The notes below the pieces were generated by a model. That model did not search any database, was not told the DNA's origin, and saw only the letters and a list, made by a program, of their open reading frames with translations. Positions 1 to 52,700 of a stretch of 64,000 nucleotides of DNA are shown here, in pieces. Source of the DNA: Macrostomum lignano (taxonomy: Eukaryota); the NCBI GenBank assembly GCA_002269645.1, contig NIVC01003394.1:1-64000 (forward strand), given 5' to 3'. Numbering within the stretch: position 1 is the first letter of the stretch; each line of letters opens with the position of its first letter. The translations under genes were made by a program, and so were the position numbers.

Positions 1-325
1 TATTACTATTCTGCAACTCGCGTGATGCGCTCGTGACTCAACAGTCTCCTCAGAGTCGCTAGAGTCACTGGTGAGTTGTCTGCAATGACTGCTTAGCGAC
101 TCTTGTCACGGTAAAGTTTTCAACGGTTTGACAGCTTCACTATTTTGCAGTCAAATAATGAAAACACCGATTCGATGCGATGTGTATAAGCGCGCGTCAT
201 ACTTGAAGAATATAAGTGTATTTAGTTGTAACGAACTAAACCAATTATCAGGTATATAATTGAGAACAATCTGCGAGGAGAAAGACAGGCATGTACAGGT
301 AATGCACAATCAACCGCTGTAGCTG

Positions 326-1340
326 TCAAACGGTAACTCCGATGGTCCTCTTCTTGACAATGTAGGCGCAGGTGCTAAAGAAGAAGACAAAAGCCAGGAA
401 GATCAGCACCTTGTCGGTGAAATCCCTGCGCGAGAGTCTGGTGAGCAGACGCTTAGCGGTGCTAATATGCCCCGTCATCGATTTGAGCTCTTCGCCAGTT
501 TCTGTGAGCTGCTCTGACGAGCGCAGCAGCCTATTGGCGGTCTCTGAGCTGGCCTCGACCTGCTCCGCCAGCTGGTTGCTAAGCAACAGCAGCGACTGGG
601 TCACGTGCGAGGCGGCGGCAGCGGCGGTCTCCTCGCGTTGGCGAACGCGGCGTCTGAAATCGACAGATAAATTGTCAGGTTTATGACCCGCTACTGACAG
701 CAATGATCGAAGGATAAAATCGTCAGGTTTATGACCCGCTACTGACAGCAATGACCGATGGACTGTCAGGTTTATGACCCGCTACTGACAGCAATGACCG
801 ATAGATGAATTGTCAGGTTTATGACTCACTATCGACAGCAATGATCGACAGACAAAATTTATGACTAATTCTTGATCAGCATAAAGTTTGGCCTCCGACA
901 CAAAAAAATCTGAAAGTGAACAGAAACATCGGCACGCACCTGGCAACGCCATCATCGCCCTGAACGTCGCCTATGCCTCCGTCGGCGCCATCACTGCGCA
1001 GCAGGTCCACCCGCTCAGCCTCCTGCAAGGCCTGCTTCCGCTGCAGCGCCGTCTCGCGCATCGCCTCCTGGGACGCCTGCAGGCTGCGCTGGCAGTTGCG
1101 CGCCTCGCGTTCAACTCGAGCCCGCTCGGCGTCGCCCTCGACGGCGTCCAGCAGGCCGTCGAGTTGACGTAGCAGCCGGCGAATCTCGCGAAGGCACTCG
1201 CGACCGACAGACTCCAGGCTGGCGAGGTCCCGCTGGCTGCGGCAGGCCTCCGGGCTGCGCAGGTCAGCGATGGCCTCCTTGAGTCGAGCGTCCTGACGGA
1301 CCAGCTCCTCCAGCGTCTGCGACACTCGCGGGTTTCCGTC
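326..1340 (-). CDS. SEC20: Vesicle transport protein SEC20 / BNIP1 (ER t-SNARE); exons 1340..940 and 653..326
   Basis: The C-terminus ELKSMTGHISTAKRLLTRLSRRDFTDKVLIFLAFVFFFSTCAYIVKKR matches the BNIP1/Sec20 SNARE+TM pattern (EFKSM..I..GRKL..KY.RRE.TDKLLIFLA). The GT-AG intron 939..654 has matching phase 2 (GCC AG|GTGCGT ... TTTCAG|A CGC). There is no in-frame ATG; the exon starts at an in-frame AG acceptor at 1341/1342. Confidence 0.88.
668..870. repeat. ~45-49 bp tandem repeat, ~4 copies, in the SEC20 intron
   Basis: Recurring core gtcaggtttatgacccgctactgacagcaatga. Confidence 0.9.
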
Positions 1341-1384
1341 CTGAAGTTCCGGAAGGGCGTGGACTGGCGATTAGCGGTATTAGG

Positions 1385-1862
1385 GTGACCGTGGTCTGAC
1401 GGGTTGCGGTCATGGTGTGACCGTGGACTGACAGGTTGCGGTCATGGTGTGACCGTGGACTGACGGGTTGCGGTCATGGTGTGACCGTGGACTGACGGGT
1501 TGCGGTCATGGTGTGACTGTGGACTGACGGGTTGCGGTCATGATGTGACCGTGGACTGACGGGTTGCGGTCATGGTGTAACTGTGGACTGACGGTTTGCG
1601 GTCATGGTGTGACCGTGGACTGACGGGTTGCGGTCATGTTGTGACGGTGGACTGACGGGTTGCGGTCATGGTGTGACCGTGGACTGACGGGTTGCGGTCA
1701 TGGTGTGACCGTGGACTGACGGGTTGCGGTCATGGTGTGACCGTGGACTGACAGGTTGCGGTCATGGTGTGACCGTGGACTGACGGGTTGCGGTCATGTT
1801 GTGACGGTGGACTGACGGGTTGCGGTCATGGTGTGACCGTGGACTGACGGGTTGCGGTCATC
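1385..1862. repeat. 32-bp minisatellite, ~15 copies
   Basis: Unit ggtgtgaccgtggactgacgggttgcggtcat; period checked at 1411 and 1443. Confidence 0.95.
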
Positions 1863-1949
1863 ATAGATGTTACTGGGTTTGGGCTTAGTAAGGACATAGA
1901 CTACATGGGCTGGATGCATTATAACCATAGAACATTGTCCTAAGAAGAT

Positions 1950-2210
1950 AGTATGACCATAGACTAATGTGTAAGGAGATAATAAGATCATAGACTAAGG
2001 ACCTCAGAAGATAGTATGACCATAGACTAATGTGTAAGGAGATAATAAGATCATAGACTAAGGACCTCAGAAGATATTATGACTAATAGACTAATGTGTA
2101 AGGAGATAATAAGATCATAGACTAATGACCTCAGAAGATATTATGACTAATAGACTAATGACTATGACCATAGACTAAGGACCTAATGAGATATTATGAC
2201 CATAGACTAA
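1950..2210. repeat. ~62-bp degenerate tandem repeat, ~4 copies
   Basis: Recurring catagactaatgtgtaaggagataataagatcatagactaaggacctcagaagat. Confidence 0.8.
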
Positions 2211-2721
2211 TAATAACCTAAAGAGATAATATGATACTTATACTTGTTACCATATAAAAAATAAACAGCTTGCTAAAATGCTACTAATGGAGAAAGAAAC
2301 CCTCAAGTATACACTTAAACAGAGGCATCAAAAAAATAAGAAAAAAGTCGTCATAAGTGTATATTCACACTAAAAAGTAAATCAGTTAGCAGTTAGCACA
2401 CATATAAATAATTATAGAATGATATTTCAGCATGCAGTAAGCGAGAACACAGCAAGTATACATACCGCTATACAATAAATAAATTGCACAACATATTTCG
2501 CTAATATGAAGCAGGATGGCATTTAGTTTCTGTCTTGTAAGGCAGCGTAAAAAGTTGAAATGGTTGGGCCAGGCTAGTGACTTCAGTACCCAGCTGATAA
2601 CCCAAAGTTAAAGAGTTCACTATTAATTATGTGTAATAATAACTACGACACCCCAATTTACTTGGGTTGGTGCAACTGTGATTGTAGAGGGATAAGAGGG
2701 CGATTTTCAAACTTTTGATGC

Positions 2722-3630
2722 ACCATTCTTAAGATTTGATAGGCGATTCTCAAGATTTGATGGGCGATTCTCAAGATTTGATGGGCGATTCTCAAGATTT
2801 GATAGGCGATTCTCAAGAATTGATGGGCGATTCTCAAGATTTGATGGGCGATTCTCAAGATTTGATGGGCGATTCTCAAGAATTGATAAAGGATTCTCAA
2901 GATTTGATGGGCGATTCTCAAGATTTGATGGGCGATTCTCAAGATTTGATGGGCGATTCTCAAGATTTAATGGGCGATTCTCAAGAATTGATAAAGGATT
3001 CTCAAGATTTGATAGGCGATTCTCAAGATTTGATGGGCGATTCTCAAGATTTGATGGGCGATTCTCAAGATTTGATGGGCGATTCTCAAGATTTGATGGG
3101 CGATTCTCAAGATTTAATGGGCGATTCTCAAGAATTGATAAAGGATTCTCAAGATTTGATAGGCGATTCTCAAGATTTGATGGGCGATTCTCAAGATTTG
3201 ATGGGCGATTCTCAAGATTTGATGGGCGATTCTCAAGATTTGATGGGCGATTCTCAAGATTTGATGGGCGATTCTCAAGATTTGATGGGCGATTCTCAAG
3301 ATTTGATGGGCGATTCTCAAGAATTGATAAAGGATTCTCAAGATTTGATGGGCGATTCTCAAGATTTGATGGGCGATTCTCAAGATTTGATGGGCGATTC
3401 TCAAGATTTGATAAAGGATTCTCAAGATTTGATAGGCGATTCTCAAGATTTGATGGGCGATTCTCAAGATTCGTTAAGCGATTCTCAAGATTCGTTAAGC
3501 GATTCTCAAGATTCGTTAAGCAATTCTAAGATTTAATGGCGATTCTCAAGATTTGATGGGCGATTCTCAAGATTTGATGGGCGATTCTCATGACCTGATG
3601 GGCGATTCTCAAGACCTGATAGACGATTTT
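2722..3630. repeat. 21-bp minisatellite, ~40 copies
   Basis: Unit gatttgatgggcgattctcaa; source of the spurious (GDSQDLM)n and (RIAHQIL)n ORFs. Confidence 0.95.
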
Positions 3631-3818
3631 CAAAGATTGTCATTTCAATCGATTATTTGAAATTGATTGAAATGACTATTGAAAAATCTAGGACCAATCT
3701 AAATATAGAGAGACAAAAACATTTAATAGTAAAAGGCAGTCTTCTCAACCTGCTTACTAACATATGATGAGTAAAATAACGGAAACACCTGAATGGGCCA
3801 GCCCCAGATGATCAGAGT

Positions 3819-6800
3819 TTAAACCCCGCCGCAGTCCAGCCGCTTGCCAACGGCGCGCACCCGGAAGCCGATCCGCAGCAGGGCCTCGTGGTCCAGCACG
3901 TTGCGCCCGTCGAACACGAATGCCGGCTTTGCCATGCTGGCAAAGATGCGGCCAAAGTCCAGCTGGGAGAATTCCGACCATTCGGTGCAGATGACAACAG
4001 CGTGAGCGCCCTCGGCAGCTGAGTAGGCGTCTGAGCACACTGTTAGCACAGCTGCATCGGATGCCTCATCCGGCTCGGGCTGGTTCAGGTCTAATCGAAT
4101 CTGGGAGCTCGCCACCTTTGAATAGATTGCGGGGGGGGCTCATGGAGGAGAGCAGATTGTGGGGGGGGGTCTTGGAGGGGAGCTGATTGTGGTGTGGGGG
4201 GCGGGTCATGGAGGAGAGCAGATTGTTGAGGGTTCATGGAGGGGAGCAGATTGTTGAGGGTTCATGGAGGGGAGCAGATTGTTGAGGGTTCATGGAGGGG
4301 AGCAGATTGTTGAGGGTTCATGGAGGGGAGCAGATTGTGGAGGCGGGTCATGGAGGGGAGCAGATTGTGGGGGGGGCGGGTCATGGATGGGAGCAGATTG
4401 TTGAGGGGTCATGGATGGGAGCAGATTGTTGAGGGGTCATGGATGGGAGCAGATTGTTGAGGGGTCATGGATGGGAGCAGATTTTTGAGGGGTCATGGAG
4501 GGGAGCAGATTGTGGGGGCGGGTCATGGAGGGGAGCAGATTGTGGGGGGGGCGGTCATGGAGGGGAGCAGATTTTTGAGGGGTCATGGATGGGAGCAGAT
4601 TGTTGAGGGGTCATGGATGGGAGCAGATTGTTGAGGGGTCATGGATGGGAGCAGATTGTTGAGGGGTCATGGATGGGAGCAGATTTTTGAGGGGTCATGG
4701 AGGGGAGCAGATTGTGGGGGGCGGGTCATGGAGGGGAGCAGATTGTGGGGGGGGGCGGGTCATGGAGGGGAGCAGATTTTTGAGGGGTCATGGATGGGAG
4801 CAGATTGTTGAGGGGTCATGGATGGGAGCAGATTGTTGAGGGGTCATGGATGGGAGCAGATTTTTGAGGGGTCATGGAGGGGAGCAGATTGTGGGGAGGG
4901 GGTGGGTTTCGGATGGGAGCCGATTGTCGGTGGGATAGTAAAAGGAAGTGGATTGATGGGGGCGGATCCTAGAGATGGAAGGGGTCGAGAGGACAATAGA
5001 AAAGTCAGCACCTAGATCAACAGCGATCCACGCCAACAAACCTTGGGATCGTAGACCCTGAGCAGGGCGCCCTCATCAATCAGCCTCCTGCAGACGTCAA
5101 TAGCAGGAGATTCCCTGGTATCGCCGGTGTCCTTCTTGAATGCGAAGCCAAGCACGGCGATCCTCTTGCCTTTTACCGTGTTGAACAGGTCGACAATAAT
5201 CTTGTCGGCGAATCGGTACTTCTGGTACTGGTTGAGCGTCACCACGGATTCCCAGTACCTGGCCACCTCCGGCAGGTTGAGGCACTCGCACAGGTACACC
5301 AAGTTGAGCACGTCTTTTTGAAAGCAGCTGCCGCCGAAGCCCAGACTGGCGCAGAGGAACCTCGGCCCGATACGCGAGTCCGCGCCAACCGCTTGGGCCA
5401 CCTCGGACACGTCGGCTCCCGTGGCCTCGCAGATTGCAGAGGCCGCATTGATGCTGCTGATGCGCTGGGCCAGCATGGCGTTGGCAACCAGCTTGGACAG
5501 CTCGGAGCTCCACAGGTTCATTGTTACCAGGCGCTCTTTAGGTACCCAGCGAGCGTACACCTGGGTGGACAGTAGCACACGAAACAGCATACAGTGTCCC
5601 TCAATGGTGGATGACAGTAGCACACGAAACAGCATACAGTGTCCCTCAATGGTGGATGACAGTAGCACACGAAACTCCATACAGTGTCCCTCAATGGTGG
5701 ATGACAGTAACACACGAAACTGCATACAGTGTCCCTCAATGGTGGATGACAGTAACACACGAAACTGCATACAGTGTCCCTCAATGGTGGATGACAGTAG
5801 CACACGAAACTGCATACAGTGTCCCTCAATGGTGGATGACAGTAGCACACGAAACTGCATACAGTGTCCCTCAATGGTGGATGACAGTAGCACACGAAAC
5901 AGCATACAGTGTCCCTCAATGGTGGATGACAGTAGCACACGAAACAGCATACAGTGTCCCTCAATGGTGGATGACAGTAGCACACGAAACAGCATACAGT
6001 GTCCCTCAATGGTGGATGACAGTAGCACACGAAACAGCATACAGTGTCCCTCAATGGTGGATGACAGTAGCACACGAAACTGCATACAGTGTCCCTCAAT
6101 GGTGGATGACAGTAGCACACGAAACTGCATACAGTGTCCCTCAATGGTGGATGACAGTAACACACGAAACTGCATACAGTGTCCCTCAATGGTGGATGAC
6201 AGTAGCACACGAAACTGCATACAGTGTCCCTCAATAGTGGACAGTTAGCACATGAAACTGCATACAATGTTCCTCAATAGTGGACAGTAGCACACGAAAC
6301 TGCATACAATGTTCCTCAATAGTGGACAGTTAGCACATGAAACTGCATACAATGTTCCTCAATAGTGGACAGTAGCACACGAAACTGCATACAATGTTCC
6401 TCAATAGTGGACAGTTAGCACATGAAACTGTGAAAATAACTTTATAGACGACTCCATTCTTATTTATAAAGACTATTTCTTACCGAGACAAGCCTCTGCA
6501 CCGCTTCTTGACCTTTATCTGTTCTCTCGCCGCCAATCAGAACCCGATCAGGCCTGAGCAGATCCTGCACAGCGGAGCCCTCGGCCAGGAACTCAGGATT
6601 GGACAGCACAGTGTGACGAACGCCTGGCCGTTCGTTGGCTCGCAGGATTGTGCAGATGCTCTCGGCAGCTCGAACTGGCACGGTGCTTTTCTCAACTACA
6701 ATCTTGGGCTGGCTGGCCGTGCGAACAATGTGCCTGCGGACCGGCGAGGGGGTGGATGAGAAGCTGATGATTTTGAGTAGCTATGTTTTGAGAACTAACA

Positions 6801-8432
6801 CAATCTCAGGAAATAGATTAGGGCAAAGCACAATTCTAAGAAATAGATTAGGGTAAAAGCAGGATTCCAGGAAATAAATTCGAGTGAAAGCAGGATTCCA
6901 GGAAATATATTAGGGTGAAAGCAGGATTCCAGGAAATAGATATGGGTGAAAGCAGGTTTCCAGGAAATATATTAGGGTGGAAGAAGAATTCCAGGAAATA
7001 GATTAGGGTGAAACGAGATTCTAGGAAACAAATTTGGGTGAAGCGCGATTCCAGGAAATACGACATCGTAGATTAGGATGAAACGGGATTCTAGGAAATA
7101 GATAAGGATGAAACGAGATTCTAGGAAATAGATAAGGGTGAAACGGGATTCTAGGAAATAGATAAGGGTGAAACGGGATTCCGGGAAATAGACAAGGGTG
7201 AAACGGGGTTCTAGGAAATAGATAAGGGTGAAAGCAGGATTCCAGGAAATAGTTTAGGGTGAGAGCAGGATTCCAGGAAATAGTTTAGGGTGAGAGCAGG
7301 ATTCCAGGAAATAGATTAGGGTAAAGCGAGATTCTAGGAAATACGAGATCGTAGATAGGGTGAAACGGGATTCCGGGAAATAGACAAGGGTGAAACGGGA
7401 TTCCGGGAAATAGACAAGGGTGAAACGGGATTCTAGGAAATAGATAAGGGTGAAAGCAGGATTCCAGGAAAGAGTTTAGGGTGAGAGCAGGATTCCAGGA
7501 AATAGTTTAGGGTGAGAGCAGGATTCCAGGAAATAGATTAGGGTAAAGCGAGATTCTAGGAAATACGAGATCGTAGATAGGGTGAAACGGGATTCCGGGA
7601 AATAGACAAGGGTGAAACGGGATTCCGGGAAATAGACAAGGGTGAAACGGGATTCTAGGAAATAGATAAGGGTGAAATGGGATTCTAGGAAATAGATAAG
7701 GGTGAAACGGGATTCCGGGAAATAGACAAGGGTGAAACGGGGTTCTAGGAAATAGATAAGGGTGAAACGGGATTCTAGGAAATAGATAAGGGTGAAACGG
7801 GATTCTAGGAAATAGATAAGGGTGAAACGGGATTCTAGGAAATAGATAAGGGTGAAACGGGATTCTAGGAAATAGATAAGGGTGAAACGGGATTCTAGGA
7901 AATAGATAAGGGTGAAACAGGATTCTAGGAAATAGATAAGGGTGAAACGGGATTCTGGAACTCTTAGAAAGTCTTCAGTTAATCAGAACTATGAAAGATA
8001 ATTTCGTGAAAGCAAAGCCAACTAATCAAAGGCACACCTGGCCGCAGCCTCAAGCGTGGTCAAGTCGGCCGCCTTGCCCTGGCCCAGTCCATAGGCTTTG
8101 GTGGGGGTGTTGACGCAGATGAACACGAGATCGGCGCCCTCCAGCGGGCCAATCATGTCGCAGCTGAAGTGCAAATTGACGCCCCTGGTCTGGCTAATCA
8201 GTTCGGACAAGCCTGGCTCGTACAGCGGGTGCCTGTCCGAGTTCCAGGCGGCCACTTTAGCGGCCGAGATGTCCACCACGGTGACGTCAATGTCCGGGCA
8301 CTTGCTAGCGATCACTGCGCTGGACGGCACGCCGACATAGCCAGCGCCGATGCAGCAGATGCGCCGGATTGGCTGATGCGGGGGCCGCGTGGCCTGCGCG
8401 TCACCTGACGTTGACATGCCGGCCGCCCGCAT
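3819..8432 (-). CDS. UGDH: UDP-glucose 6-dehydrogenase; exons 8432..8038, 6733..6484, 5560..5042, 4115..3819
   Basis: Motifs [10 protein letters not shown] (Rossmann), [45 protein letters not shown] (catalytic Cys), [25 protein letters not shown]. Three GT-AG introns with matching phases (2, 0, 0). Confidence 0.97.
4130..4910. repeat. ~27-29 bp G-rich minisatellite in UGDH intron 3
   Basis: Unit gtcatgga(g/t)gggagcagattgttgaggg. Confidence 0.92.
5563..6428. repeat. 45-bp minisatellite in UGDH intron 2, abutting the 3' splice site
   Basis: Unit gtggatgacagtagcacacgaaactgcatacagtgtccctcaatg; accounts for the repetitive N-terminal part of ORF 5012..6220. Confidence 0.95.
6805..7958. repeat. 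~30-31 bp minisatellite in UGDH intron 1
   Basis: Unit gggtgaaacgggattctaggaaatagataa with variants ttccaggaa and ttccgggaa. Confidence 0.93.
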
Positions 8433-8453
8433 TGGATTAACGCGCTGGCTGGA

Positions 8454-9312
8454 TTAGCAATCCATACTATTCATTATGCTGGCTATACTAGCAATCCATA
8501 CTATTCATTATGCTGGCTATACTAGCAATCCATACTATTCATTATGCTGGCTATACTAGCAATCCATACTATTCATTATGCTGGCTATACTAGCAATCCA
8601 TACTATTCATTATGCTGGCTATACTAGCAATCCATACTATTCATTATGCTGGCTATACTAGCAATCCATACTATTCATTATGCTGGCTATACTAGCAATC
8701 CATTCTATTCCTTATGCTGACTATACTAGCAATCCATACTATTCATTATGCTGGCTATACTAGCAATCCATTCTATTCATTATGCTGACTATACTAGCAA
8801 TCCATACTATTCATTATGCTGGCTATACTAGCAATCCATACTATTCCTTATGCTGGCTATACTAGCAATCCATACTATTCATTATGCTGCCTATACTAGC
8901 AATCCATTCTATTCATTATGCTGACTATACTAGCAATCCATTCTAATCATTATGCAGGCAATACGAGCAATCCATTCTTTTCATTATGCTGGCTATACTA
9001 GCAATCCATTCTATTCATTATGCAGGCAATACTAGCAATCCATTCTATTCCTTATGCTGGCTATACTAGCAATCCATTCTATTCATTATGCTGACTATAC
9101 TAGCAATCCATTCTATTCCTTGTACTGGCTATACTAGCAATCCATTCTATTCCTTATGCTGGCTATACTAGCAATCCATACTATTCATTATGCTGGCTAT
9201 ACTAGCAATCCATTCTATTCCTTATACTGGCTATACTAGCAATCCATTCTATTCCTTGTACTGGCTATACTAGCAATCCATTCTATTCCTTGTACTGGCT
9301 ATACTAGCAATC
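8454..9312. repeat. 34-bp minisatellite, ~25 copies, starting 22 bp upstream of the UGDH ATG
   Basis: Unit tactagcaatccatactattcattatgctggcta. Confidence 0.95.
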
Positions 9313-9983
9313 CACTTTAACAACTACACTCAGGCTAATTTACCATTTAATTCTGTATTTCACAGAGCCACTAGCATCAGAATTTAGAATTTTAAATACG
9401 AATAACAATTATTAAATAAAACAAAAAACTACATAAGTCTATAGAAATTACAAGTTGAAAATCCATTACAAAATTATTATTAAAGGGAAAATTTTGAGCA
9501 AATTGGGTTTCAAAAAAGGAAAAGCAGAGACGTATACTTAATTATTTGGCGCAAAAGTAAGCAAAAACGTATAGCAAAAATATGGGTGCTATATATACCA
9601 CTGACAACCTTGAAATAGTAGTAAAAAGGACAACAGCTCTAACTGTGCATGAATTCTAATAGTAAGCATCAGGAAAAAATCAGAACTTACAGTGAAAAAA
9701 CAATAGACTAATTGTAAAACTACTGCCTACTATAAGTAGTGAGCTGGTGGCGATGAGCATACAACTCGCAGATGCAGTAAAACCAATTCGTTAAAAATAT
9801 AAAACTGATCGTCGATCTTGTGTTGTTATGAATTACATTAAAGCCATCCAATTAAATGTACAAATGACTTATGGAAAATTACAAACTACAATTGATTGAT
9901 TCACAAAATACTTATAAAGTACTCTCGAATGAAACTCAAAACTCAAAGGGAGAGACTCAAAAATAAACTCTTTTGGTTTGGCA

Positions 9984-10842: not shown

Positions 10843-12204
10843 TCAAGACGAAGAGCAACAGTTAGAAAGCGACCGCCGGTTGCCACCCAGTGACAACCTG
10901 TGACCAGTCAGGCGGTCATTGTCAGCTGCAAGTGCCGGCGGTGACAAGCGAATCCTTTTAAGCAGCTCCTCGGCCACAGTGTGGAACAGGCGGTCAACAT
11001 TGCAGTTGTCTTTAGCGGAGGTCTCCAGGTGGGCCAGCATTGCTAGCCTGTTGGCAAATTCGCGGCCTTCAATAGCTGACACCTGGCGCTGAGACTCCAG
11101 ATCGCACTTGCAGCCAATGAGCAGGTGAATGGCTTGAGAACCAGCGTACCGATTCAGGTCCTCTACCCAGTGGTGCAGAGAGTCGAATGTCTCCTGTGAT
11201 TTGGATATTGTGTCATTTATTATACAGTAGTCTTACCACATCGAAACCGTAGGATTCTGAATGACTCAAATCCTTGGAAGATGATTCTGAATGACTCAAA
11301 TCCTTGGAAGATGATTCTGAATGACTCAAATCCTTGGAAGATGATTCTGAATGACTCAAATCCTTGGAAGATGATTCTGAATGACTCAAATCCTTGGAAG
11401 ATGATTCTGAATGACTCAAATCCTTGGAAGATGATTCTGAATGACTCAAATCCTTGGAAAAATGATTCGGAATGACTAAAATCTTTGGAAACTGATACTG
11501 AATGACTCAAATCCTTGGAAGCTGATTCTGAATGAATTAAATCCTTGGAAAAATGATTCGGAATGACTAAAATCTTTGGAAACTGATACTGAATGACTCA
11601 AATCCTTTAAAATGATTTTGTATGACTCAAAACTTAGCATTTGATTTTGAAAACTATTTTGAGTGACTCAAACCCTTGGAAGATAATTCTGAATAACTAA
11701 AATTCATAAATTTAAGTGCCTATAAGTCAAACTCGTTGAACCACAAAAAGAAGGTAACTTTCAATGACTAAACTCTGTCGGAAAAAGATTATGACATTAC
11801 TCAAATTTTTAGTAGATCACTCTGAGTAGTTCAACAAGTTGGAAGGTGATTCTGAATTGCTAATAAAGTTCCAGGTTACTAACTTTCAGGAAGATTATAT
11901 ATTATAAGTAATCACTGACCCGCCTAGTAATATCGTAGGCTATGATAGCAGCGCTGGCCGATCGATAATAGGACTGAGTGATCGTTCGAAACCTTTCCTG
12001 ACCGGCCGTGTCCCAGATCTGCAGCTTGACGCGAACTCCATCAATCAGCAGAGTCTTCATAGCGAAGTCCACCCCAATTGTGTTGGCCTGGGTCTCGCAA
12101 TAGTTGCCAGTTTTGAAGCACTGGACAATGCAGGATTTGCCAACGCTGGTGTCGCCAACAATGACCAGCTTGAACTGATAGTCGAACTGGTCATCTGGCT
12201 GCAT
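10843..12204 (-). CDS. RAB43: Rab43/Rab19-like small GTPase; exons 12204..11920 and 11193..10843
   Basis: [14 protein letters not shown] (G1), [29 protein letters not shown] (Rab30/43/19 group), HLETSAKD (G5), C-terminal CC..; phase-0 GT-AG intron (CGG|GTCAGT ... CACAG|GAG ACA TTC). Confidence 0.88.
11250..11700. repeat. 30-bp minisatellite in the Rab intron
   Basis: Unit gattctgaatgactcaaatccttggaagat, degenerating to the right. Confidence 0.92.
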
Positions 12205-21890: not shown

Positions 21891-24800
21891 TTACGCCCGA
21901 CCGTCTCCATCGTCCAACTCGCTGCTGTCGCTTGCCGCGCGCAGAAAGTCGTCAACAGACAGAATCTTCTCGCGCGGCTTCCCCAAAGATCGGCCGCTCC
22001 GCTGCTCGGCGGCGTCGATCCGCTCCCAGTCGGCGAAGGTGGTGTAGCGGACGCCTCGAGATCGCAGCTCTTTGACAAGTGCCAGACGGCCGGTTCTGGA
22101 CTCGGTAGGCAGCCGGCCGGAGTTCAGATCCTCTAGCAGGCGCTGAGCAGTGTGGAAGCTGTCCGACATGGTGCTGAGCAGCACGCCAGATGGTCCGGTT
22201 TTAAGCCAGCCGGCGCAGTAAGCGTTGTCAAGGCCGCTAATTTTGCCGTTGTCATTGGCAACTACGCCAGTTCGACTGTCCATGGGGATTAGCGGGTCCA
22301 GGGCGACGTTCTCGTAGCCGACGCTGACAACAGCGAGGCCGCAGTCAAGGCCGACCAACTCGTCCGTGGCTTCGACTTTGTCCGAGGTGGGCGAATCTGC
22401 TGGCGAATGGCGATTCCGCTTGAACTGGACGGAGCCGACCCGATGGGGAGAAGCTGCCGATGCGAGGAACTCCAATGGAGACAGAAGGAAATGCAGAGTC
22501 AGCTGGCGCGGCGACTGCGCTGCCACTTCAGGGTTCTCTGCCGATTTTAGCACCTGAAAAATTGGGGAAATTGAAAGGCAGGGCAAGTAGAATGTGTTAA
22601 CTTTCAATGGGAGCTTAAGTCCCTGGGTCGGGGACTCAAGTAACAGAGATTTTTTGATGCCACATGCACAGGGATGGGGCAAAAGTAAATTGAATGTAGT
22701 CCTTAATAGTCCTTCAACTTTATAATTGAAGGAAGAGTCTAGGGCGAGTTGATGGGAGATTATAGGGCTAGTTGAAAGGGACTATAGGGCTAGTTGAAAG
22801 GGGATTCTAGGGCTAGTTGAAAGGGGATTCTAGGGCTAGTTGAAAGGGGATTCTAGGGCTAGTTGAAAGGGGATTCTAGGGCTAGTTGACGGGAGATTCT
22901 AGGGCTAGTTGAAAGGGGACTATAGGGCTAGTTGAAAGAGTATTCTAGGGCTAGTTGAAAGGGGATTCTAGGGCTAGTTGAAAGGGGATTCTAGGGCTAG
23001 TTGAAAGGGGATTCTAGGGCTAGTTGACGGGAGATTCTAGGGCTAGTTGAAAGGGGACTATAGGGCTAGTTGAAAGAGTATTCTAGGGCTAGTTGAAAGG
23101 GGATTCTAGGGCTAGTTGAAAGGGGATTCTAGGGCTAGTTGAAAGGGGATTCTAGGGCTAGTTGACGGGAGATTCTAGGGCTAGTTGAAAGGGGACTATA
23201 GGGCTAGTTGAAAGAGTATTCTAGGGCTAGTTGAAAGGGGATTCTAGGGCTAGTTGAAAGAGTATTATAGGGCTAGTTGATGGAAGATTCTAGGACTAGT
23301 TGAAAGGCGATTCTAGGACTAGTTGAAAGAAGATTCTAGGGCTAGTTGATGGGAGATTCTAGGGCTAGTTGATGGGAGATTCTAGGGCTAGTTGATGGGA
23401 GATTCTAGGGCTAGTTGATGGGAGATTCTAGGGCTAGTTGATGGGAGATTCTAGGGCTAGTTGATGGAAGATTCTAGAGCTAGTTTATGGGAGATTCTAG
23501 GGCCGTGATGGGAGATTCTAGGGCTGTTGATGGGATATTCTAGAGCTAGTTGATGGGAGATTCTAGGGCTGTTGATGGGAGATTATAGGGCTAGTTGATG
23601 GGAGATTCTAGGGCTAGTTGATGGGAGATTCTAGGGCTAGTTGATGGGAGATTCTAGGGCTAGTTGATGGAAGATTCTAGAGCTAGTTTATGGGAGATTC
23701 TAGGGCCGTGATGGGAGATTCTAGGGCTGTTGATGGGATATTCTAGAGCTAGTTGATGGGAGATTCTAGGGCTGTTGATGGGAGATTATAGGGCTGTTGA
23801 TGAGATATTCTAGGGCTAGTTGATGGGAGATTCTAGGTCTGTTGATGGGAGATTCTAGGGCTAGTTGATGGGAGATTCTAGGGCTAGTTGATGGGAGATT
23901 CTAGGGCTAGTTGATGGGAGATTCTAGGGCTGTTGATGGGAGATTATAGGGCTGTTGATGAGATATTCTAGGGCTAGTTGATGGGAGATTCTAGGGCTGT
24001 TGATGGGATATTCTAGGGCTAGTTGATGGGAGATTCTAGGGCTGTTGATGGGAGATTCTAGGGTTAGATAGTTGATGGGAGATTCTAGGGCTGTTGATGG
24101 GATATTCTAGGACTAGTTGATGGGAGATTCTAGGGTTAGTTGATGGGATATTCTAGGGCTAGTTGATGGGAAATTCAAGGACAAATTGATGGGATTCTAG
24201 GGTTAGTTGATGGGATATTCTAGGGCTAGTTGATGGGATATTCTAGGGCTAGTTGATGGGAAATTCAAGGACAAATTGATGGGATTCTAGGATCCATGCT
24301 TTCAGAATGTGGACTTTCTATAAAACGAGAGGAATCCATGATTATAGGAAAAACAAGGAAATGAGAACTATGTTAATTTACCAGTTCAGTAAGCCGGCGC
24401 CGCGGTCTCGGCAGCCCAGCTAGCAGCTCCGGCGACAGCTGGGCGGCGGACGGCGCGCCTTCCAGACAGACACCAACGCCGTCAAGGCGGGCCAGCTCGC
24501 GGAACTCTTTCGTGTGAACGCCGCCTGCAGGAGGCCTCGCCGGCCAACCAGACGGACTCGGCGAACCTCGGACTCCTCGGCTAGGCGGCGAAGCACCGCC
24601 TCCGGGGCGTCGGTGCGGCGCAGGCGGTCGGGGCTGGACAGCAGGATGCGGGCCACGTCAAGCGCCACGTTGCCATGCCCGATTATAACTGCTGTCTCGG
24701 CTGCCGCCAGGTCAACTTTCAGGTTCTCGGCGCCGGGGAAGCCGTTGTACCAGTTGACGAAGTCCCTTGTGAAGTGGGAGGCGCGGGACGGCTTGGAATA

Positions 24801-35878: not shown

Positions 35879-40608
<4,730 letters not shown>

Positions 40609-49774: not shown

Positions 49775-52700
49775 TCACACTATATAGGCAGGTACATTGC
49801 ACAGTATATAGCGGCCACAAAGTTGACAATTCTTCATATCGCTGACGCACACTTGGCAGAACTTCAGGTGAGCGCACGGCAGCACGATCCGATTGCGTTG
49901 GCGACTGCGGCACTGAACACACTGCGGGCTGTCATCGTCTTGAAGCAGTGGATTGGCGTGCGTTACATCTTGCTCACTGCAATCGGGTTTTGTTCAAGGG
50001 GAATGTTTGAGAGGGTTGCGTGCAGCAATCACATCAAATCGAAGCAGACAGCTTAGACTAATATGTTATTAAATTTCCTCAGATAGGAGTTTTTAAACAC
50101 CCGTGAACTAGCTACTGGCTGGCGCCCCTGGTGCTGGCGCCCCTGGTGCTGGCGCCCCTGGTGCTGGCGCCCCTGGTGCTGGCGCCCCTGGTGCTGGCGC
50201 CCCTGGTGCTGGCGCCCCTGGTGCTGGCGCCCCTGGTGCTGGCGCCCCTGGTGCTGGCGCCCCTGGTGCTGGCGCCCCTGGTGCTGGCGCCCCTGGTGCT
50301 GGCGCCCCTGGTGCTGGCGCCCCTGGTGCTGGCGCCCCTGGTGCTGGCGCCCCTGGTGCTGGCGCCTCTGGTGCTGGCGCCCCTGGTTCTGGCGCCCCTG
50401 GTGCTGGCGCCCCTGGTGCTGGCGCCCCTGGTTCTGGCGCCCCTGGTGCTGGCGCCCCTGGTGCTGGCGCCCCTGGTGCTTGCGCGTCTGGTGCTGGCGC
50501 CCCTGGTGCTGGCGCCCCTGGTGCTGGCGCCCCTGGTGCTGGCGCCCCTGGTTCTGGCGCCCCTGGTGCTGGCGCCCCTGGTGCTGGCGCCCCTGGTGCT
50601 GGCGCCCCTGGTGCTGGCGCCCCTGGTGCTGGCGCCCCTGGTGCTGGCGCCCCTGGTTCTGGCGCCCCTGGTTCTGGCGCCCCTGGTTCTGGCGCCCCTG
50701 GTGCTTGCGCCCCTGGTGCTGGCGCCCCTGGTGCTGGCGCCCCTGGTGCTGGCGCCCCTGGTGCTGGCGCCCCTGGTGCTGGCGCCCCTGGTGCTGGCGC
50801 CCCTGGTGCTTGCGCGTCTGGTGCTTGCGCGTCTGGTGCTTGCGCGTCTGGTGCTTGCGCGTCTGGTGCTTGCGCGTCTGGTGCTTGCGCGTCTGGTGCT
50901 TGCGCGTCTGGTGCTTGCGCGTCTGGTGCTTGCGCGTCTGGTGCTTGCGCGTCTGGTGCTTGCGCGTCTGGTGCTTGCGCGTCTGGTGCTTGCGCGTCTG
51001 GTGCTTGCGCGTCTGGTGCTTGCGCGTCTGGTGCTTGCGCGTCTGGTGCTGGCGCCCCTGGTGCTGGCGCCCCTGGTGCTGGCGCCCCTGGTGCTGGCGC
51101 CCCTGGTGCTGGCGCCCCTGGTGCTGGCGCCCCTGGTGCTGGCGCCCCTGGTGCTGGCGCCCCTGGTGCTAAAGCCCCTGGTGCTAAAGCCCCTGGTGCT
51201 AAAGCCCCTGGTGCTAAAGCCCCTGGTGCTAAAGCCCCTGGTGCTAAAGCCCCTGGTGCTAAAGCCCCTGGTGCTAAAGCCCCTGGTGCTAAAGCCCCTG
51301 GTGCTAAAGCCCCTGGTGCTAAAGCCCCTGGTGCTAAAGCCCCTGGTGCTAAAGCCCCTGGTGCTAAAGCCCCTGGTGCTAAAGCCCCTGGTGCTAAAGC
51401 CCCTGGTGCTAAAGCCCCTGGTGCTAAAGCCCCTGGTGCTAAAGCCCCTGGTGCTAAAGCCCCTGGTGCTAAAGCCCCTGGTGCTAAAGCCCCTGGTGCT
51501 AAAGCCCCTGGTGCTAAAGCCCCTGGTGCTAAAGCCCCTGGTGCTAAAGCCCCTGGTGCTAAAGCCCCTGGTGCTAAAGCCCCTGGTGCTAAAGCCCCTG
51601 GTGCTAAAGCCCCTGGTGCTAAAGCCCCTGGTGCTAAAGCCCCTGGTGCTAAAGCCCCTGGTGCTAAAGCCCCTGGTGCTAAAGCCCTGGTGCTAAAGCC
51701 CCTGGTGCTAAAGCCCCTGGTGCTAAAGCCCCTGGTGCTAAAGCCCCTGGTGCTAAAGCCCCTGGTGCTAAAGCCCCTGGTGCTAAAGCCCCTGGTGCTA
51801 AAGCCCCTGGTGCTAAAGCCCCTGGTGCAAAGGTGCTCTGAAGATTGGCCCAGTCATCTAATATCTAATATTTGGAAAGCTCGGTTTAAATCTGATAGCG
51901 GACTCATATAATGGACAAAAATCTGTACATGTTGGTTAAATGCAAACTCAAAAGCATAGAGCAATAATACACGTAACTCGTAGTTACTACGACTTTAACA
52001 GTTGAACCGCAGCAGAGCAGCAAAAGCAGCATCTGTCGAACTTTGAAGCCACCGAGTTAACAAAAATCCTATAGGCGGCCTGCCGACCTCCTTAGCATCA
52101 GCGATGTTGCTTAATCAGAATGCATCCTATTGGCACGAGTACGCTGGATCAATGGCGAGTTTTGACTTTTACCGTGTTTTGTTTCAGTTTAGCAACTAAA
52201 AACGATGGCATAAATGAATTCGATATTAGTTTTTTAGGGGCTGTGTGCACCCTGGCGCACTTTAAGCGACATTGTCACACAACCGGCGAGAGGCATTACT
52301 GCTTATTCCGCCGACTGCCCTGAGCAGGCACACAAGCGCGCGGATACGCACGCAGTCATACCCACAGGCGCGCACTCACATAGGGGTGTACAGCGGCCCT
52401 GACTTTATTTATCGTTAGGCATGTACACTTCACTGTGCCTTGGGGTATGGATTCCAATTTAGCCCCAAATTCATGTGACTGCACTTGGAATCGAGCCTGG
52501 GCCGCTGGCACATGAGAGCGCCGCACCACACCACTGGTTGTTATTGCTTCCCCAAACAACAAAAGGTGTTATTGCTCATATTTAAAATTATGATTACTAT
52601 TAATATTTTTAAAATACGTCCTGTGTGTTGGCACGCAGTTAGTGACTTGCACTTCCGACTGAACTGTTGAATCTATCGACGGTCTGCATGGTGATGTTGC

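What the first reader, a model, noticed from the sequence alone, without database searches (positions are those of the whole stretch)
1323..1375. SEC20 has no genomic ATG: probable initiator AUG donated by a trans-spliced leader
Seen: the reading frame is closed by TAA at 1373..1371, there is no ATG in frame, and an acceptor (cccttccggaacttcag) sits exactly in phase 0 before GAC GGA AAC CCG CGA GTG. Adding one Met gives MDGNPRVSQTLEELVRQD, close in length to the BNIP1 N-terminus (MAAPQDVHVRICNQEIVKFD). Established: flatworm spliced leaders end in AUG, which can serve as the start codon. Inference: this gene depends on the SL for its start codon.
Basis: partly seen in the sequence, partly recalled or inferred. 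Interest (0 to 1): 0.7.

Follow-up and report, generated by a model that had tools for sequence, protein, structure and literature searches.

The report
SEC20 start codon from spliced leader
In the flatworm Macrostomum lignano, the SEC20 gene starts at a splice acceptor with no start codon of its own, so its AUG most likely comes from the trans-spliced leader RNA, a mechanism already known in flatworms.

Summary
The window is Macrostomum lignano contig NIVC01003394.1. A two-exon SEC20/BNIP1 gene lies on the minus strand (exon 1 1340..940, exon 2 653..326). Its frame is closed by TAA at 1373-1371, and the first in-frame ATG is codon 94 (1061-1059). CTTCAG|GAC (1346-1341|1340) matches the published M. 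lignano trans-splice acceptor motif [T/C]TNCAG and lies in phase 0. The species' single 35-nt spliced leader (SL) ends in ATG.

- Four annotated models at paralogous copies start or join exactly at this acceptor.
- Paralog divergence drops from 13/45 nt upstream to 0/54 nt downstream of it.
- One added Met makes the N-terminus collinear with 35 orthologs.
- SEC20 is gene g2 of transcriptional unit Mlig028127. UDP-glucose dehydrogenase (UGDH, g1) lies upstream, separated by about 760 non-repeat bases, an operon-like arrangement.

SL donation of the AUG is therefore the best explanation (about 0.75). I could not retrieve an SL-exon junction read. Two annotated in-frame UGDH-SEC20 cis-spliced isoforms use the same acceptor, so "depends on the SL" is not proven. 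The mechanism is established in flatworms (Cheng et al. 2006), so this is a new example, not a new kind.

The parts
1371..1373 (-). In-frame TAA that closes the SEC20 reading frame 11 codons upstream of the exon start
   Evidence: The divergent paralog L002 has TGA 24 codons upstream instead, also with no ATG in between.
1341..1362 (-). 3' splice acceptor region: pyrimidine-rich stretch ending in CTTCAG (1346-1341). The AG at 1342-1341 is the proposed SL trans-splice site, in phase 0.
   Evidence: Sequence. It matches the published M. lignano trans-splice acceptor motif [T/C]TNCAG. Models P0002 and P0159 start at this nucleotide, and fusion models P0006 and P0157 join at it.
940..1340 (-). SEC20 exon 1 (133 codons + 2 nt), encoding DGNPRVSQTLEELVRQD... 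with no initiator codon. Donor is AG|gtgcgt at 940|939.
   Evidence: Only 3 of the first 279 nt differ from paralog L002. phmmer aligns it from residue 1-13 to the N-termini of orthologs.
1059..1061 (-). First genomic ATG of the mature mRNA in any frame (in frame, codon 94). Starting here would delete the conserved N-terminal domain.
654..939 (-). Intron 1, containing a 43-48-nt minisatellite
326..653 (-). SEC20 exon 2 coding part: Sec20 SNARE domain and C-terminal transmembrane anchor, with stop TGA at 328-326
1385..1861 (-). 32-nt minisatellite (about 15 copies) in the presumed outron. Each unit carries an ATG, and these upstream AUGs would be removed by trans-splicing.
3819..8432 (-). Upstream same-strand gene, UDP-glucose 6-dehydrogenase (BOX15_Mlig028127g1). 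Exons are 8429..8038, 6733..6484, 5560..5042 and 4115..3819. It belongs to the same transcriptional unit as SEC20 (g2).
   Evidence: The reconstructed 485-aa product is an exact match to PAA51590.1.
6478..6489 (-). UGDH exon 2 donor (GTCTCG|gtaaga, phase 0). In paralog model P0006 it is cis-spliced in frame to the SEC20 acceptor.
3855..3866 (-). Cryptic phase-0 donor inside the last UGDH exon (TTCCGG|gtgcgc, exon side ends at 3861). In the near-identical copy L003 it is cis-spliced in frame to the SEC20 acceptor (713-aa model P0157).

Best explanation
SEC20 (BOX15_Mlig028127g2) is the downstream gene of an operon-like transcriptional unit whose first gene is UGDH.

Proposed mechanism:
1. The pre-mRNA reads through about 2.5 kb of mostly minisatellite spacer.
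2. The 35-nt M. lignano spliced leader (...TTATTGCATG) is trans-spliced to the AG at 1342-1341.
3. This removes an outron with many upstream AUGs and the in-frame TAA.
4. It places the leader's 3'-terminal AUG directly in frame before GAC (1340).
5. Translation from that AUG gives a complete 243-aa tail-anchored Sec20/BNIP1 SNARE, MDGNPRVSQTLEELVRQD...

Shown here: the missing ATG, a real splice acceptor, its phase, the constraint boundary, completeness of the N-terminus, and membership in a shared transcriptional unit.

Taken from the literature: the SL sequence and motif, and that flatworm SL AUGs initiate translation in vivo.

Inferred: that the SL is joined at this particular site and that ribosomes start on its AUG.
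For: - **Organism and SL.** The closest proteins are all M. lignano, and the window is NIVC01003394.1. The SL is CGGTCTCTTACTGCGAAGACTCAATTTATTGCATG, and 30% of genes are trans-spliced (PMC8629364).
- **Acceptor motif.** CTTCAG|G matches the top motif at mapped trans-splice sites, [T/C]TNCAG.
- **Acceptor use.** UniProt models P0002 and P0159 begin exactly at D(1340). NCBI fusion models P0006 and P0157 join exactly there.
- **No model has a Met.** UniProt and NCBI entries for all copies lack one, and the NCBI entries are flagged partial.
- **No in-frame ATG upstream.** This holds between the upstream stop and the exon in the window, in L003 and in the divergent L002.
- **Constraint boundary at the acceptor.** 13/45 nt differ upstream versus 0/54 and 3/279 downstream.
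- **N-terminus.** With one Met added, it is exactly collinear with the best ortholog P0008 (MSTPTHVTSTLQDIVRHD), and its length is within the ortholog range.
- **Shared transcriptional unit.** UGDH is Mlig028127g1 and SEC20 is Mlig028127g2. In that annotation, units are cut into genes using trans-splice and poly(A) read signals (PMC5730564). The g2 open reading frame is 5'-partial inside exon 1, which a poly(A)-only cut could not produce because of the TAA at 1373.
- **Operon spacing.** The spacer is 2478 nt, of which 1714 nt are tandem repeats. That leaves about 760 nt, below the 1-kb operon threshold of PMC8629364.
- **Precedent.** Flatworm SL AUGs serve as initiator Met (Cheng et al. 2006, cited). 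In Macrostomum the terminal ATG of the SL is described as a translation start codon (PMC10468722).
Against: - No SL-exon junction sequence could be retrieved. Exact look-ups of M-started proteins found nothing, and two metagenome scans found nothing.
- The NCBI model at this very locus starts at 1319, which is 21 nt downstream of the acceptor and not behind an AG. I cannot explain this boundary.
- A second in-phase AG at 1318-1317 exists.
- Two annotated cis-spliced in-frame UGDH-SEC20 isoforms show that an alternative, genomic AUG can reach this open reading frame.
- The SL AUG has a weak -3 position (U), though +4 is G.
Confidence: 0.75

Rival explanations
1. SEC20 is translated mainly as a UGDH-SEC20 fusion. 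A UGDH donor (the exon 2 donor, or the cryptic donor 12 codons before the UGDH stop) is cis-spliced in frame to the acceptor at 1340, so the start codon is UGDH's genomic ATG (8417 or 8432).
For: NCBI models PAA93980.1 (456 aa...EAVQRLVS|DGNPRV) and PAA77400.1 (713 aa...LLRIGFR|DGNPRV) at paralogous or duplicate loci. Both are in frame, and both donors are present in the window.
Against: - At this locus the same transcriptional unit is annotated as two genes, and UGDH has its own stop.
- A candidate ATTAAA poly(A) signal lies at 3727-3722.
- Two UniProt models start exactly at the acceptor without UGDH exons.
- All 35 full-length orthologs examined are stand-alone proteins of about 220-280 aa.
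- Phase-0 donors joining a phase-0 acceptor are expected fairly often by chance, and in-frame cases are the ones that annotation pipelines report as a single coding sequence.
- Cis use of trans-splice acceptors is a documented by-product in flatworms.
Confidence: 0.1
2. The SL is trans-spliced at the other in-phase AG (1318-1317, TCGCAG|ACG), giving M-TLEELVRQD.... The AUG still comes from the SL, but the site is 24 nt downstream of the reader's.
For: The NCBI model for this locus begins with the CAG at 1319-1317. The AG is in phase 0.
Against: - The hexamer TCGCAG does not fit [T/C]TNCAG.
- The 24 nt between the two AGs are identical in the divergent paralog, although 29% of positions differ just upstream.
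- The resulting N-terminus would have 10 residues before the anchor, shorter than all 35 orthologs (minimum 12).
- Four other models use 1340.
Confidence: 0.07
3. There is no trans-splicing. A conventional mRNA initiates at a near-cognate codon (GTG 1325, ACG 1316, CTG 1313 or 1304) or at the internal ATG 1061, the latter giving an N-terminally truncated SEC20.
For: In-frame near-cognate codons exist, and ATG 1061 is the first AUG of the exon.
Against: - The 93 codons before ATG 1061 are homologous to the N-terminal domain of orthologs and are under constraint.
- An unspliced 5' region would carry about 17 upstream AUGs from the 32-mer array and nearby sequence.
- Non-AUG initiation is rare, and an AUG-bearing SL system is available.
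Confidence: 0.05
4. An unannotated SEC20-specific upstream exon, with its own promoter and ATG, is cis-spliced to 1340.
For: The acceptor is clearly competent for cis-splicing.
Against: - No model in either annotation contains such an exon.
- The 2.5 kb upstream is about 70% minisatellite.
- The gene shares a transcriptional unit with UGDH.
Confidence: 0.03

Closest known systems
[quoted passage not shown]
   Same: A flatworm SL ending in AUG. The recipient exon begins in phase directly after the acceptor and has no AUG of its own. The N-terminus matches orthologs only if the SL AUG is used.
   Different: A different lineage (free-living Macrostomorpha) and a different SL sequence. Here neither the SL junction nor translation from it was observed. 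I could not read the 2006 paper itself; it is cited through.
Echinococcus granulosus SL-bearing cDNAs with the SL ATG in frame (PMC3510090)
   Same: That study used the same comparative argument: the SL AUG is required for the N-terminus to correspond to conserved orthologs. It found 143 of 187 SL clusters full-length with the SL ATG.
   Different: Those cases rest on sequenced cDNAs that carry the SL. This case rests on genomic anatomy plus annotation.
M. lignano operons and trans-spliced transcriptional units (Wudarski et al. 2017, PMC5730564; Ustyantsev & Berezikov 2021, PMC8629364)
   Same: Same organism, SL and acceptor motif. The g1/g2 naming of one transcriptional unit applies here, as does a repeat-inflated intergenic spacer with less than 1 kb of non-repeat sequence.
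   Different: Those papers do not discuss use of the SL ATG as a start codon ('ATG' occurs only within the SL sequence). This gene is not mentioned in the texts or supplements I could search.
slORFs, open reading frames created by SL addition in nematodes, ascidians and trypanosomes (PMC9851317)
   Same: A start codon supplied by the leader.
   Different: Those mostly use near-cognate NUG codons inside the SL and often create alternative open reading frames. Here a canonical AUG completes the main conserved open reading frame.
Shared cis/trans 3' splice acceptors in parasitic flatworms (PMC12582326)
   Same: One acceptor serves both SL trans-splicing and cis-splicing from upstream donors, as the UGDH-SEC20 fusion models suggest here.
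   Different: Here both cis products are in frame and would encode a tail-anchored UGDH-SEC20 chimera. Whether that protein is made is unknown.

Membership tests
Flatworm mRNAs initiated at the spliced-leader AUG | The organism performs SL trans-splicing with an SL whose last three bases are AUG | tested here: met
   Organism identified as M. lignano. The SL ...TTATTGCATG is reported in PMC8629364. There is no SL RNA gene in the window itself.
Flatworm mRNAs initiated at the spliced-leader AUG | The first coding exon begins at a functional 3' splice acceptor, with no in-frame genomic AUG between the upstream stop and the conserved coding sequence | tested here: met
   Acceptor use is shown by four models.
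Flatworm mRNAs initiated at the spliced-leader AUG | Acceptor phase puts the SL AUG in frame with the main open reading frame | tested here: met
   The AG at 1342-1341 is followed by codon GAC 1340-1338.
Flatworm mRNAs initiated at the spliced-leader AUG | The N-terminus corresponds to orthologs only if the SL AUG is the initiator | tested here: met
   Distance from Met to the conserved anchor is 18 residues, versus 12-34 in 35 orthologs. It is collinear with P0008. The internal ATG would remove 93 conserved residues.
Flatworm mRNAs initiated at the spliced-leader AUG | SL sequence observed joined to the exon in RNA | not testable with these tools
   No M. lignano RNA-derived sequence for this gene is in the collections. 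The g1/g2 cut of the transcriptional unit is only indirect evidence.
Flatworm mRNAs initiated at the spliced-leader AUG | Translation starts at the SL AUG (protein or ribosome evidence) | not testable with these tools
   Requires proteomics, ribosome profiling or a reporter.
Sec20/BNIP1 SNARE family | Sec20 domain (PF03908) followed by a C-terminal transmembrane anchor, with an N-terminal helical domain | tested here: met
   PF03908 E=2e-21, residues 149-237. The hydrophobic tail VLIFLAFVFFFSTCAYIV is read from the sequence. Full-length phmmer alignments to 452 relatives.
M. lignano operon (criteria of Ustyantsev & Berezikov 2021) | Adjacent same-strand genes with a repeat-adjusted intergenic distance below 1 kb | tested here: met
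   From the UGDH stop at 3819 to the acceptor at 1341 is 2478 nt. Subtracting 1714 nt of tandem repeats leaves about 760 nt. Both genes carry the same transcriptional-unit identifier.
M. lignano operon (criteria of Ustyantsev & Berezikov 2021) | The downstream gene carries mapped SL reads | not testable with these tools

The most novel reading that the evidence does not exclude
The phase-0 acceptor at 1340 is a deliberate dual-use site. SL trans-splicing yields stand-alone SEC20 started on the leader's AUG. In-frame cis-splicing from phase-0 UGDH donors yields a tail-anchored UGDH-SEC20 chimera, with UDP-glucuronate synthesis tethered to the ER membrane. The balance between cis- and trans-splicing would then set the ratio of two different proteins from one operon.
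Probability: 0.1. Interest if true: 0.55.

Novelty: new member of a known kind. Interest (0 to 1): 0.25.

Why it matters
**Biology.** This is one more instance of a mechanism established in flatworms since 2006, now in an early-branching free-living model species and for an essential ER SNARE. It suggests that dependence on the SL AUG is not confined to parasitic Neodermata.

**Annotation.** This is the practical consequence. Every public model of this gene (three UniProt-type starts and three NCBI entries) lacks a methionine, is flagged partial, or is fused to UGDH. Pipelines that trim the SL, including its ATG, will systematically produce start-less or chimeric models for such genes.

**Dual use of the acceptor.** The apparent cis and trans use of the same acceptor is worth a read-count check but is probably splicing noise.

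Tried and rejected
- **Exact-sequence look-ups of M-started SEC20 variants.** I tried the window type, the L002 type and M-TLEEL. None is in the 15-billion-protein collection.
- **Metagenome scans.** One searched for the SL-exon junction and one for the exon 5' end. Neither found anything, so that collection holds no M. lignano SEC20 RNA.
- **Papers and supplements.** Searches for Mlig028127, Mlig001104, BNIP1 and SEC20 found nothing. PMC8629364 has no supplements held. Cheng et al. 2006 and Wasik et al. 2015 are not held.
- **SL RNA gene or any Rfam family in the window.** None found.
- **Closest non-Macrostomum ortholog transcript (L004, from Logan).** I checked whether it also relies on an SL AUG. 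It has a 192-nt 5' UTR and its own ATG, so it says nothing about conservation of the mechanism.
- **Offset of the NCBI g2 start (1319).** I considered that it reflects a strand-specific peak-calling offset. The L002 g5 boundary on the same record strand showed no such offset, so I dropped this idea and the boundary stays unexplained.
- **Possible coding upstream of the acceptor.** HALPELQ in the window and HALPKLQ in L002 hinted at this. I rejected it because divergence further upstream is high, the stops differ, and neither copy has an ATG there.

Full report
**What is there.** Reading the minus strand of 1-3000 and translating it gives a two-exon gene.
- Exon 1 runs from 1340 to 940 (donor AG|gtgcgt).
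- Exon 2 runs from 653 to the TGA at 328-326.
- The intron is filled with a 43-48-nt minisatellite.
- The 242 encoded residues carry a Sec20 domain (PF03908, E=2e-21, residues 149-237) and a hydrophobic C-terminal anchor.
- The reading frame is closed by TAA at 1373-1371. Ten codons later comes CTT CAG, then GAC GGA AAC CCG CGA GTG.
- In the spliced mRNA, the first ATG in any frame is at position 280 (window 1061-1059, codon 94).

**Whose genome.** The only close proteins among 5.8 billion are Macrostomum lignano SEC20 entries. An exact-protein look-up places the gene at NIVC01003394.1:326-1319 of assembly GCA_002269645.1 (Mlig_3_7), so the window is the first 64 kb of that contig.

M. lignano trans-splices about 30% of its genes to a single 35-nt leader, CGGTCTCTTACTGCGAAGACTCAATTTATTGCATG. 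The top motif at mapped trans-splice acceptors is [T/C]TNCAG (PMC8629364). The window has CTTCAG at 1346-1341, which fits that motif. The only other nearby in-phase AG (TCGCAG, 1318-1317) does not fit it.

**Is the acceptor real?** Yes.
- UniProt models A0A1I8FUZ1 (P0002) and A0A1I8I6W5 (P0159) begin exactly with D(1340).
- NCBI PAA93980.1 (P0006) joins ...EAVQRLVS to DGNPRV.
- NCBI PAA77400.1 (P0157) joins ...LLRIGFR to DGNPRV.
- No public model has a Met. Other starts are LQDGNPRV, HALPELQDGNPRV and QTLEEL, which are genomic read-throughs or truncations, and the NCBI entries are flagged partial.

**Paralog comparison.** I fetched two further copies.
- L003 (NIVC01000746.1) is nearly identical to the window: 0 of 100 nt differ upstream and 1 of 401 nt in exon 1.
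- L002 (NIVC01000019.1) is a diverged homeolog, 80-90% identical in non-coding DNA.
- Between the window and L002, 13 of the 45 nt just upstream of the acceptor differ. None of the next 54 nt differ, and only 3 of the 279 nt before the first ATG differ, two of them synonymous. Fisher p is 1e-5 and 6e-10.
- L002 lacks the TAA but has TGA 24 codons upstream, again with no in-frame ATG.

Constraint therefore begins exactly at 1340, and two independent copies lack a genomic initiator.

**Is anything missing besides Met?** A full HMMER scan of 1.8 billion representatives found 452 relatives. Full-length ones align from query residues 1-13 to their own residues 2-25.

In a MAFFT alignment of 35 Met-started orthologs, the distance from Met to the conserved D of the first helix is 12-34 residues (median 22). 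With a single Met added, the M. lignano protein gives 18, the same as four orthologs. It is collinear residue for residue with the best hit (MSTPTHVTSTLQDIVRHD versus MDGNPRVSQTLEELVRQD). Starting at the second in-phase AG would give 10, shorter than all orthologs. Starting at ATG 1061 would delete the whole conserved N-terminal domain.

**Context.** Upstream on the same strand lies UDP-glucose 6-dehydrogenase.
- I reconstructed its four exons (8429..8038, 6733..6484, 5560..5042, 4115..3819). The 485-aa product is an exact match to PAA51590.1, locus tag BOX15_Mlig028127g1.
- SEC20 is BOX15_Mlig028127g2.
- In this annotation, a shared prefix means one transcriptional unit. Such units, described as precursor mRNAs with several trans-splicing sites, were cut into genes by the TBONE pipeline using mapped SL-read and poly(A)-read signals (PMC5730564).
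- The g2 coding sequence is 5'-partial and begins inside exon 1. It therefore cannot result from a poly(A)-only cut, because an in-frame TAA lies upstream.
- The spacer from the UGDH stop to the acceptor is 2478 nt, of which 1714 nt are tandem arrays (32-mer, 63-mer, 21-mer). That leaves about 760 nt, under the 1-kb repeat-adjusted operon threshold of PMC8629364.
- The spacer carries 39 ATGs, 17 of them below position 1900 and most of those in the 32-mer array. Trans-splicing would discard all of them.

**Mechanism.** The best-supported reading is that the SL is joined at 1341|1340 and its terminal AUG starts translation of a complete 243-aa SEC20.

That flatworm SL AUGs act as initiator methionines in vivo is established (Cheng et al. 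2006, cited in PMC9851317, PMC12582326 and PMC3510090). In E. granulosus, 143 of 187 SL-bearing clusters are full-length with the SL ATG, and some require it. For Macrostomum, PMC10468722 calls the terminal ATG a translation start codon.

**What weakens it.**
- I could not see the SL on this mRNA. The collections hold no M. lignano RNA-derived copy of the gene.
- The NCBI g2 model starts at 1319, which is 21 nt inside the exon and not behind an AG. I could not explain this.
- The two fusion models show that UGDH donors can be cis-spliced in frame to the same acceptor. These are the exon 2 donor at 6484|6483 and a cryptic donor TTCCGG|gtgcgc at 3861|3860, both present in the window.
- L003 is essentially identical to the window, yet it is annotated as a fusion while the window is annotated as g1 plus g2. 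The two annotations therefore probably reflect the same mixed read population.
- Shared cis/trans acceptors are described as extensive in parasitic flatworms. I therefore treat the fusions as co-existing, probably minor, products rather than a refutation. Only junction-read counts can settle the proportions.

**Verdict.**
- This is a new example of a known flatworm mechanism, with mainly annotation-level consequences.
- The most novel reading not excluded is that the in-frame cis/trans choice is functional and produces an ER-anchored UGDH-SEC20 chimera (about 0.1).

Noticed in passing
window 8417-8446 (minus strand); L002 9990-10015; L003 5985-6015: At the UGDH 5' end, the three copies differ in the codon just before the annotated coding start. 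The window and L002 have ATG|CGG; L003 has CAG|CGG. This codon is in frame with the UGDH open reading frame ([10 protein letters not shown]...). The CAG copy could be an in-phase trans-splice acceptor whose product would carry the SL ATG at the position where the other copies encode ATG in the genome.
   Followed up: partly
window 1319-1321 (minus strand): NCBI model PAA51589.1 for this locus begins at CAG 1319-1317 (QTLEEL...). That is 21 nt downstream of the acceptor used by four other models, and it is not preceded by an AG. The origin of this annotation boundary is unexplained.
   Followed up: partly
window 3861|3860 and 6484|6483 (minus strand); L002 and L003: Two different phase-0 UGDH donors are annotated as cis-spliced in frame to the SEC20 acceptor. 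The resulting UGDH-SEC20 chimeras are 456 aa and 713 aa. The 713-aa form keeps all but the last 12 residues of UGDH.
   Followed up: partly
window 666-848, 1385-1861, 1939-2234, 2698-3638, 4203-4892, 5568-6430, 6808-7960, 8444-9314, 11253-11631, 22726-24291, 36764-39636: Almost every intron and spacer of these genes holds a different minisatellite, with 15-63-nt units and up to 117 copies. The 25-mer array at 36.8-39.6 kb is strongly purine-skewed (GC skew up to 0.85). Copy numbers differ between paralogous loci.
   Followed up: no
window 50118-51828 (+): A 15-nt unit (GCTGGCGCCCCTGGT) is repeated 114 times at 98% identity in 65% GC DNA. It gives an open frame of VLAPL pentapeptide repeats (open reading frame 50131-51696). 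Whether it is coding is unknown.
   Followed up: no
L003 1466-2706 and 14945-16152; window about 10843-11319+: Gene order Arf/Ras-like GTPase, UGDH, SEC20, FKBP is conserved on one strand between copies. The FKBP and Arf genes have their own genomic ATGs, so SEC20 is the only gene of the four without one.
   Followed up: partly
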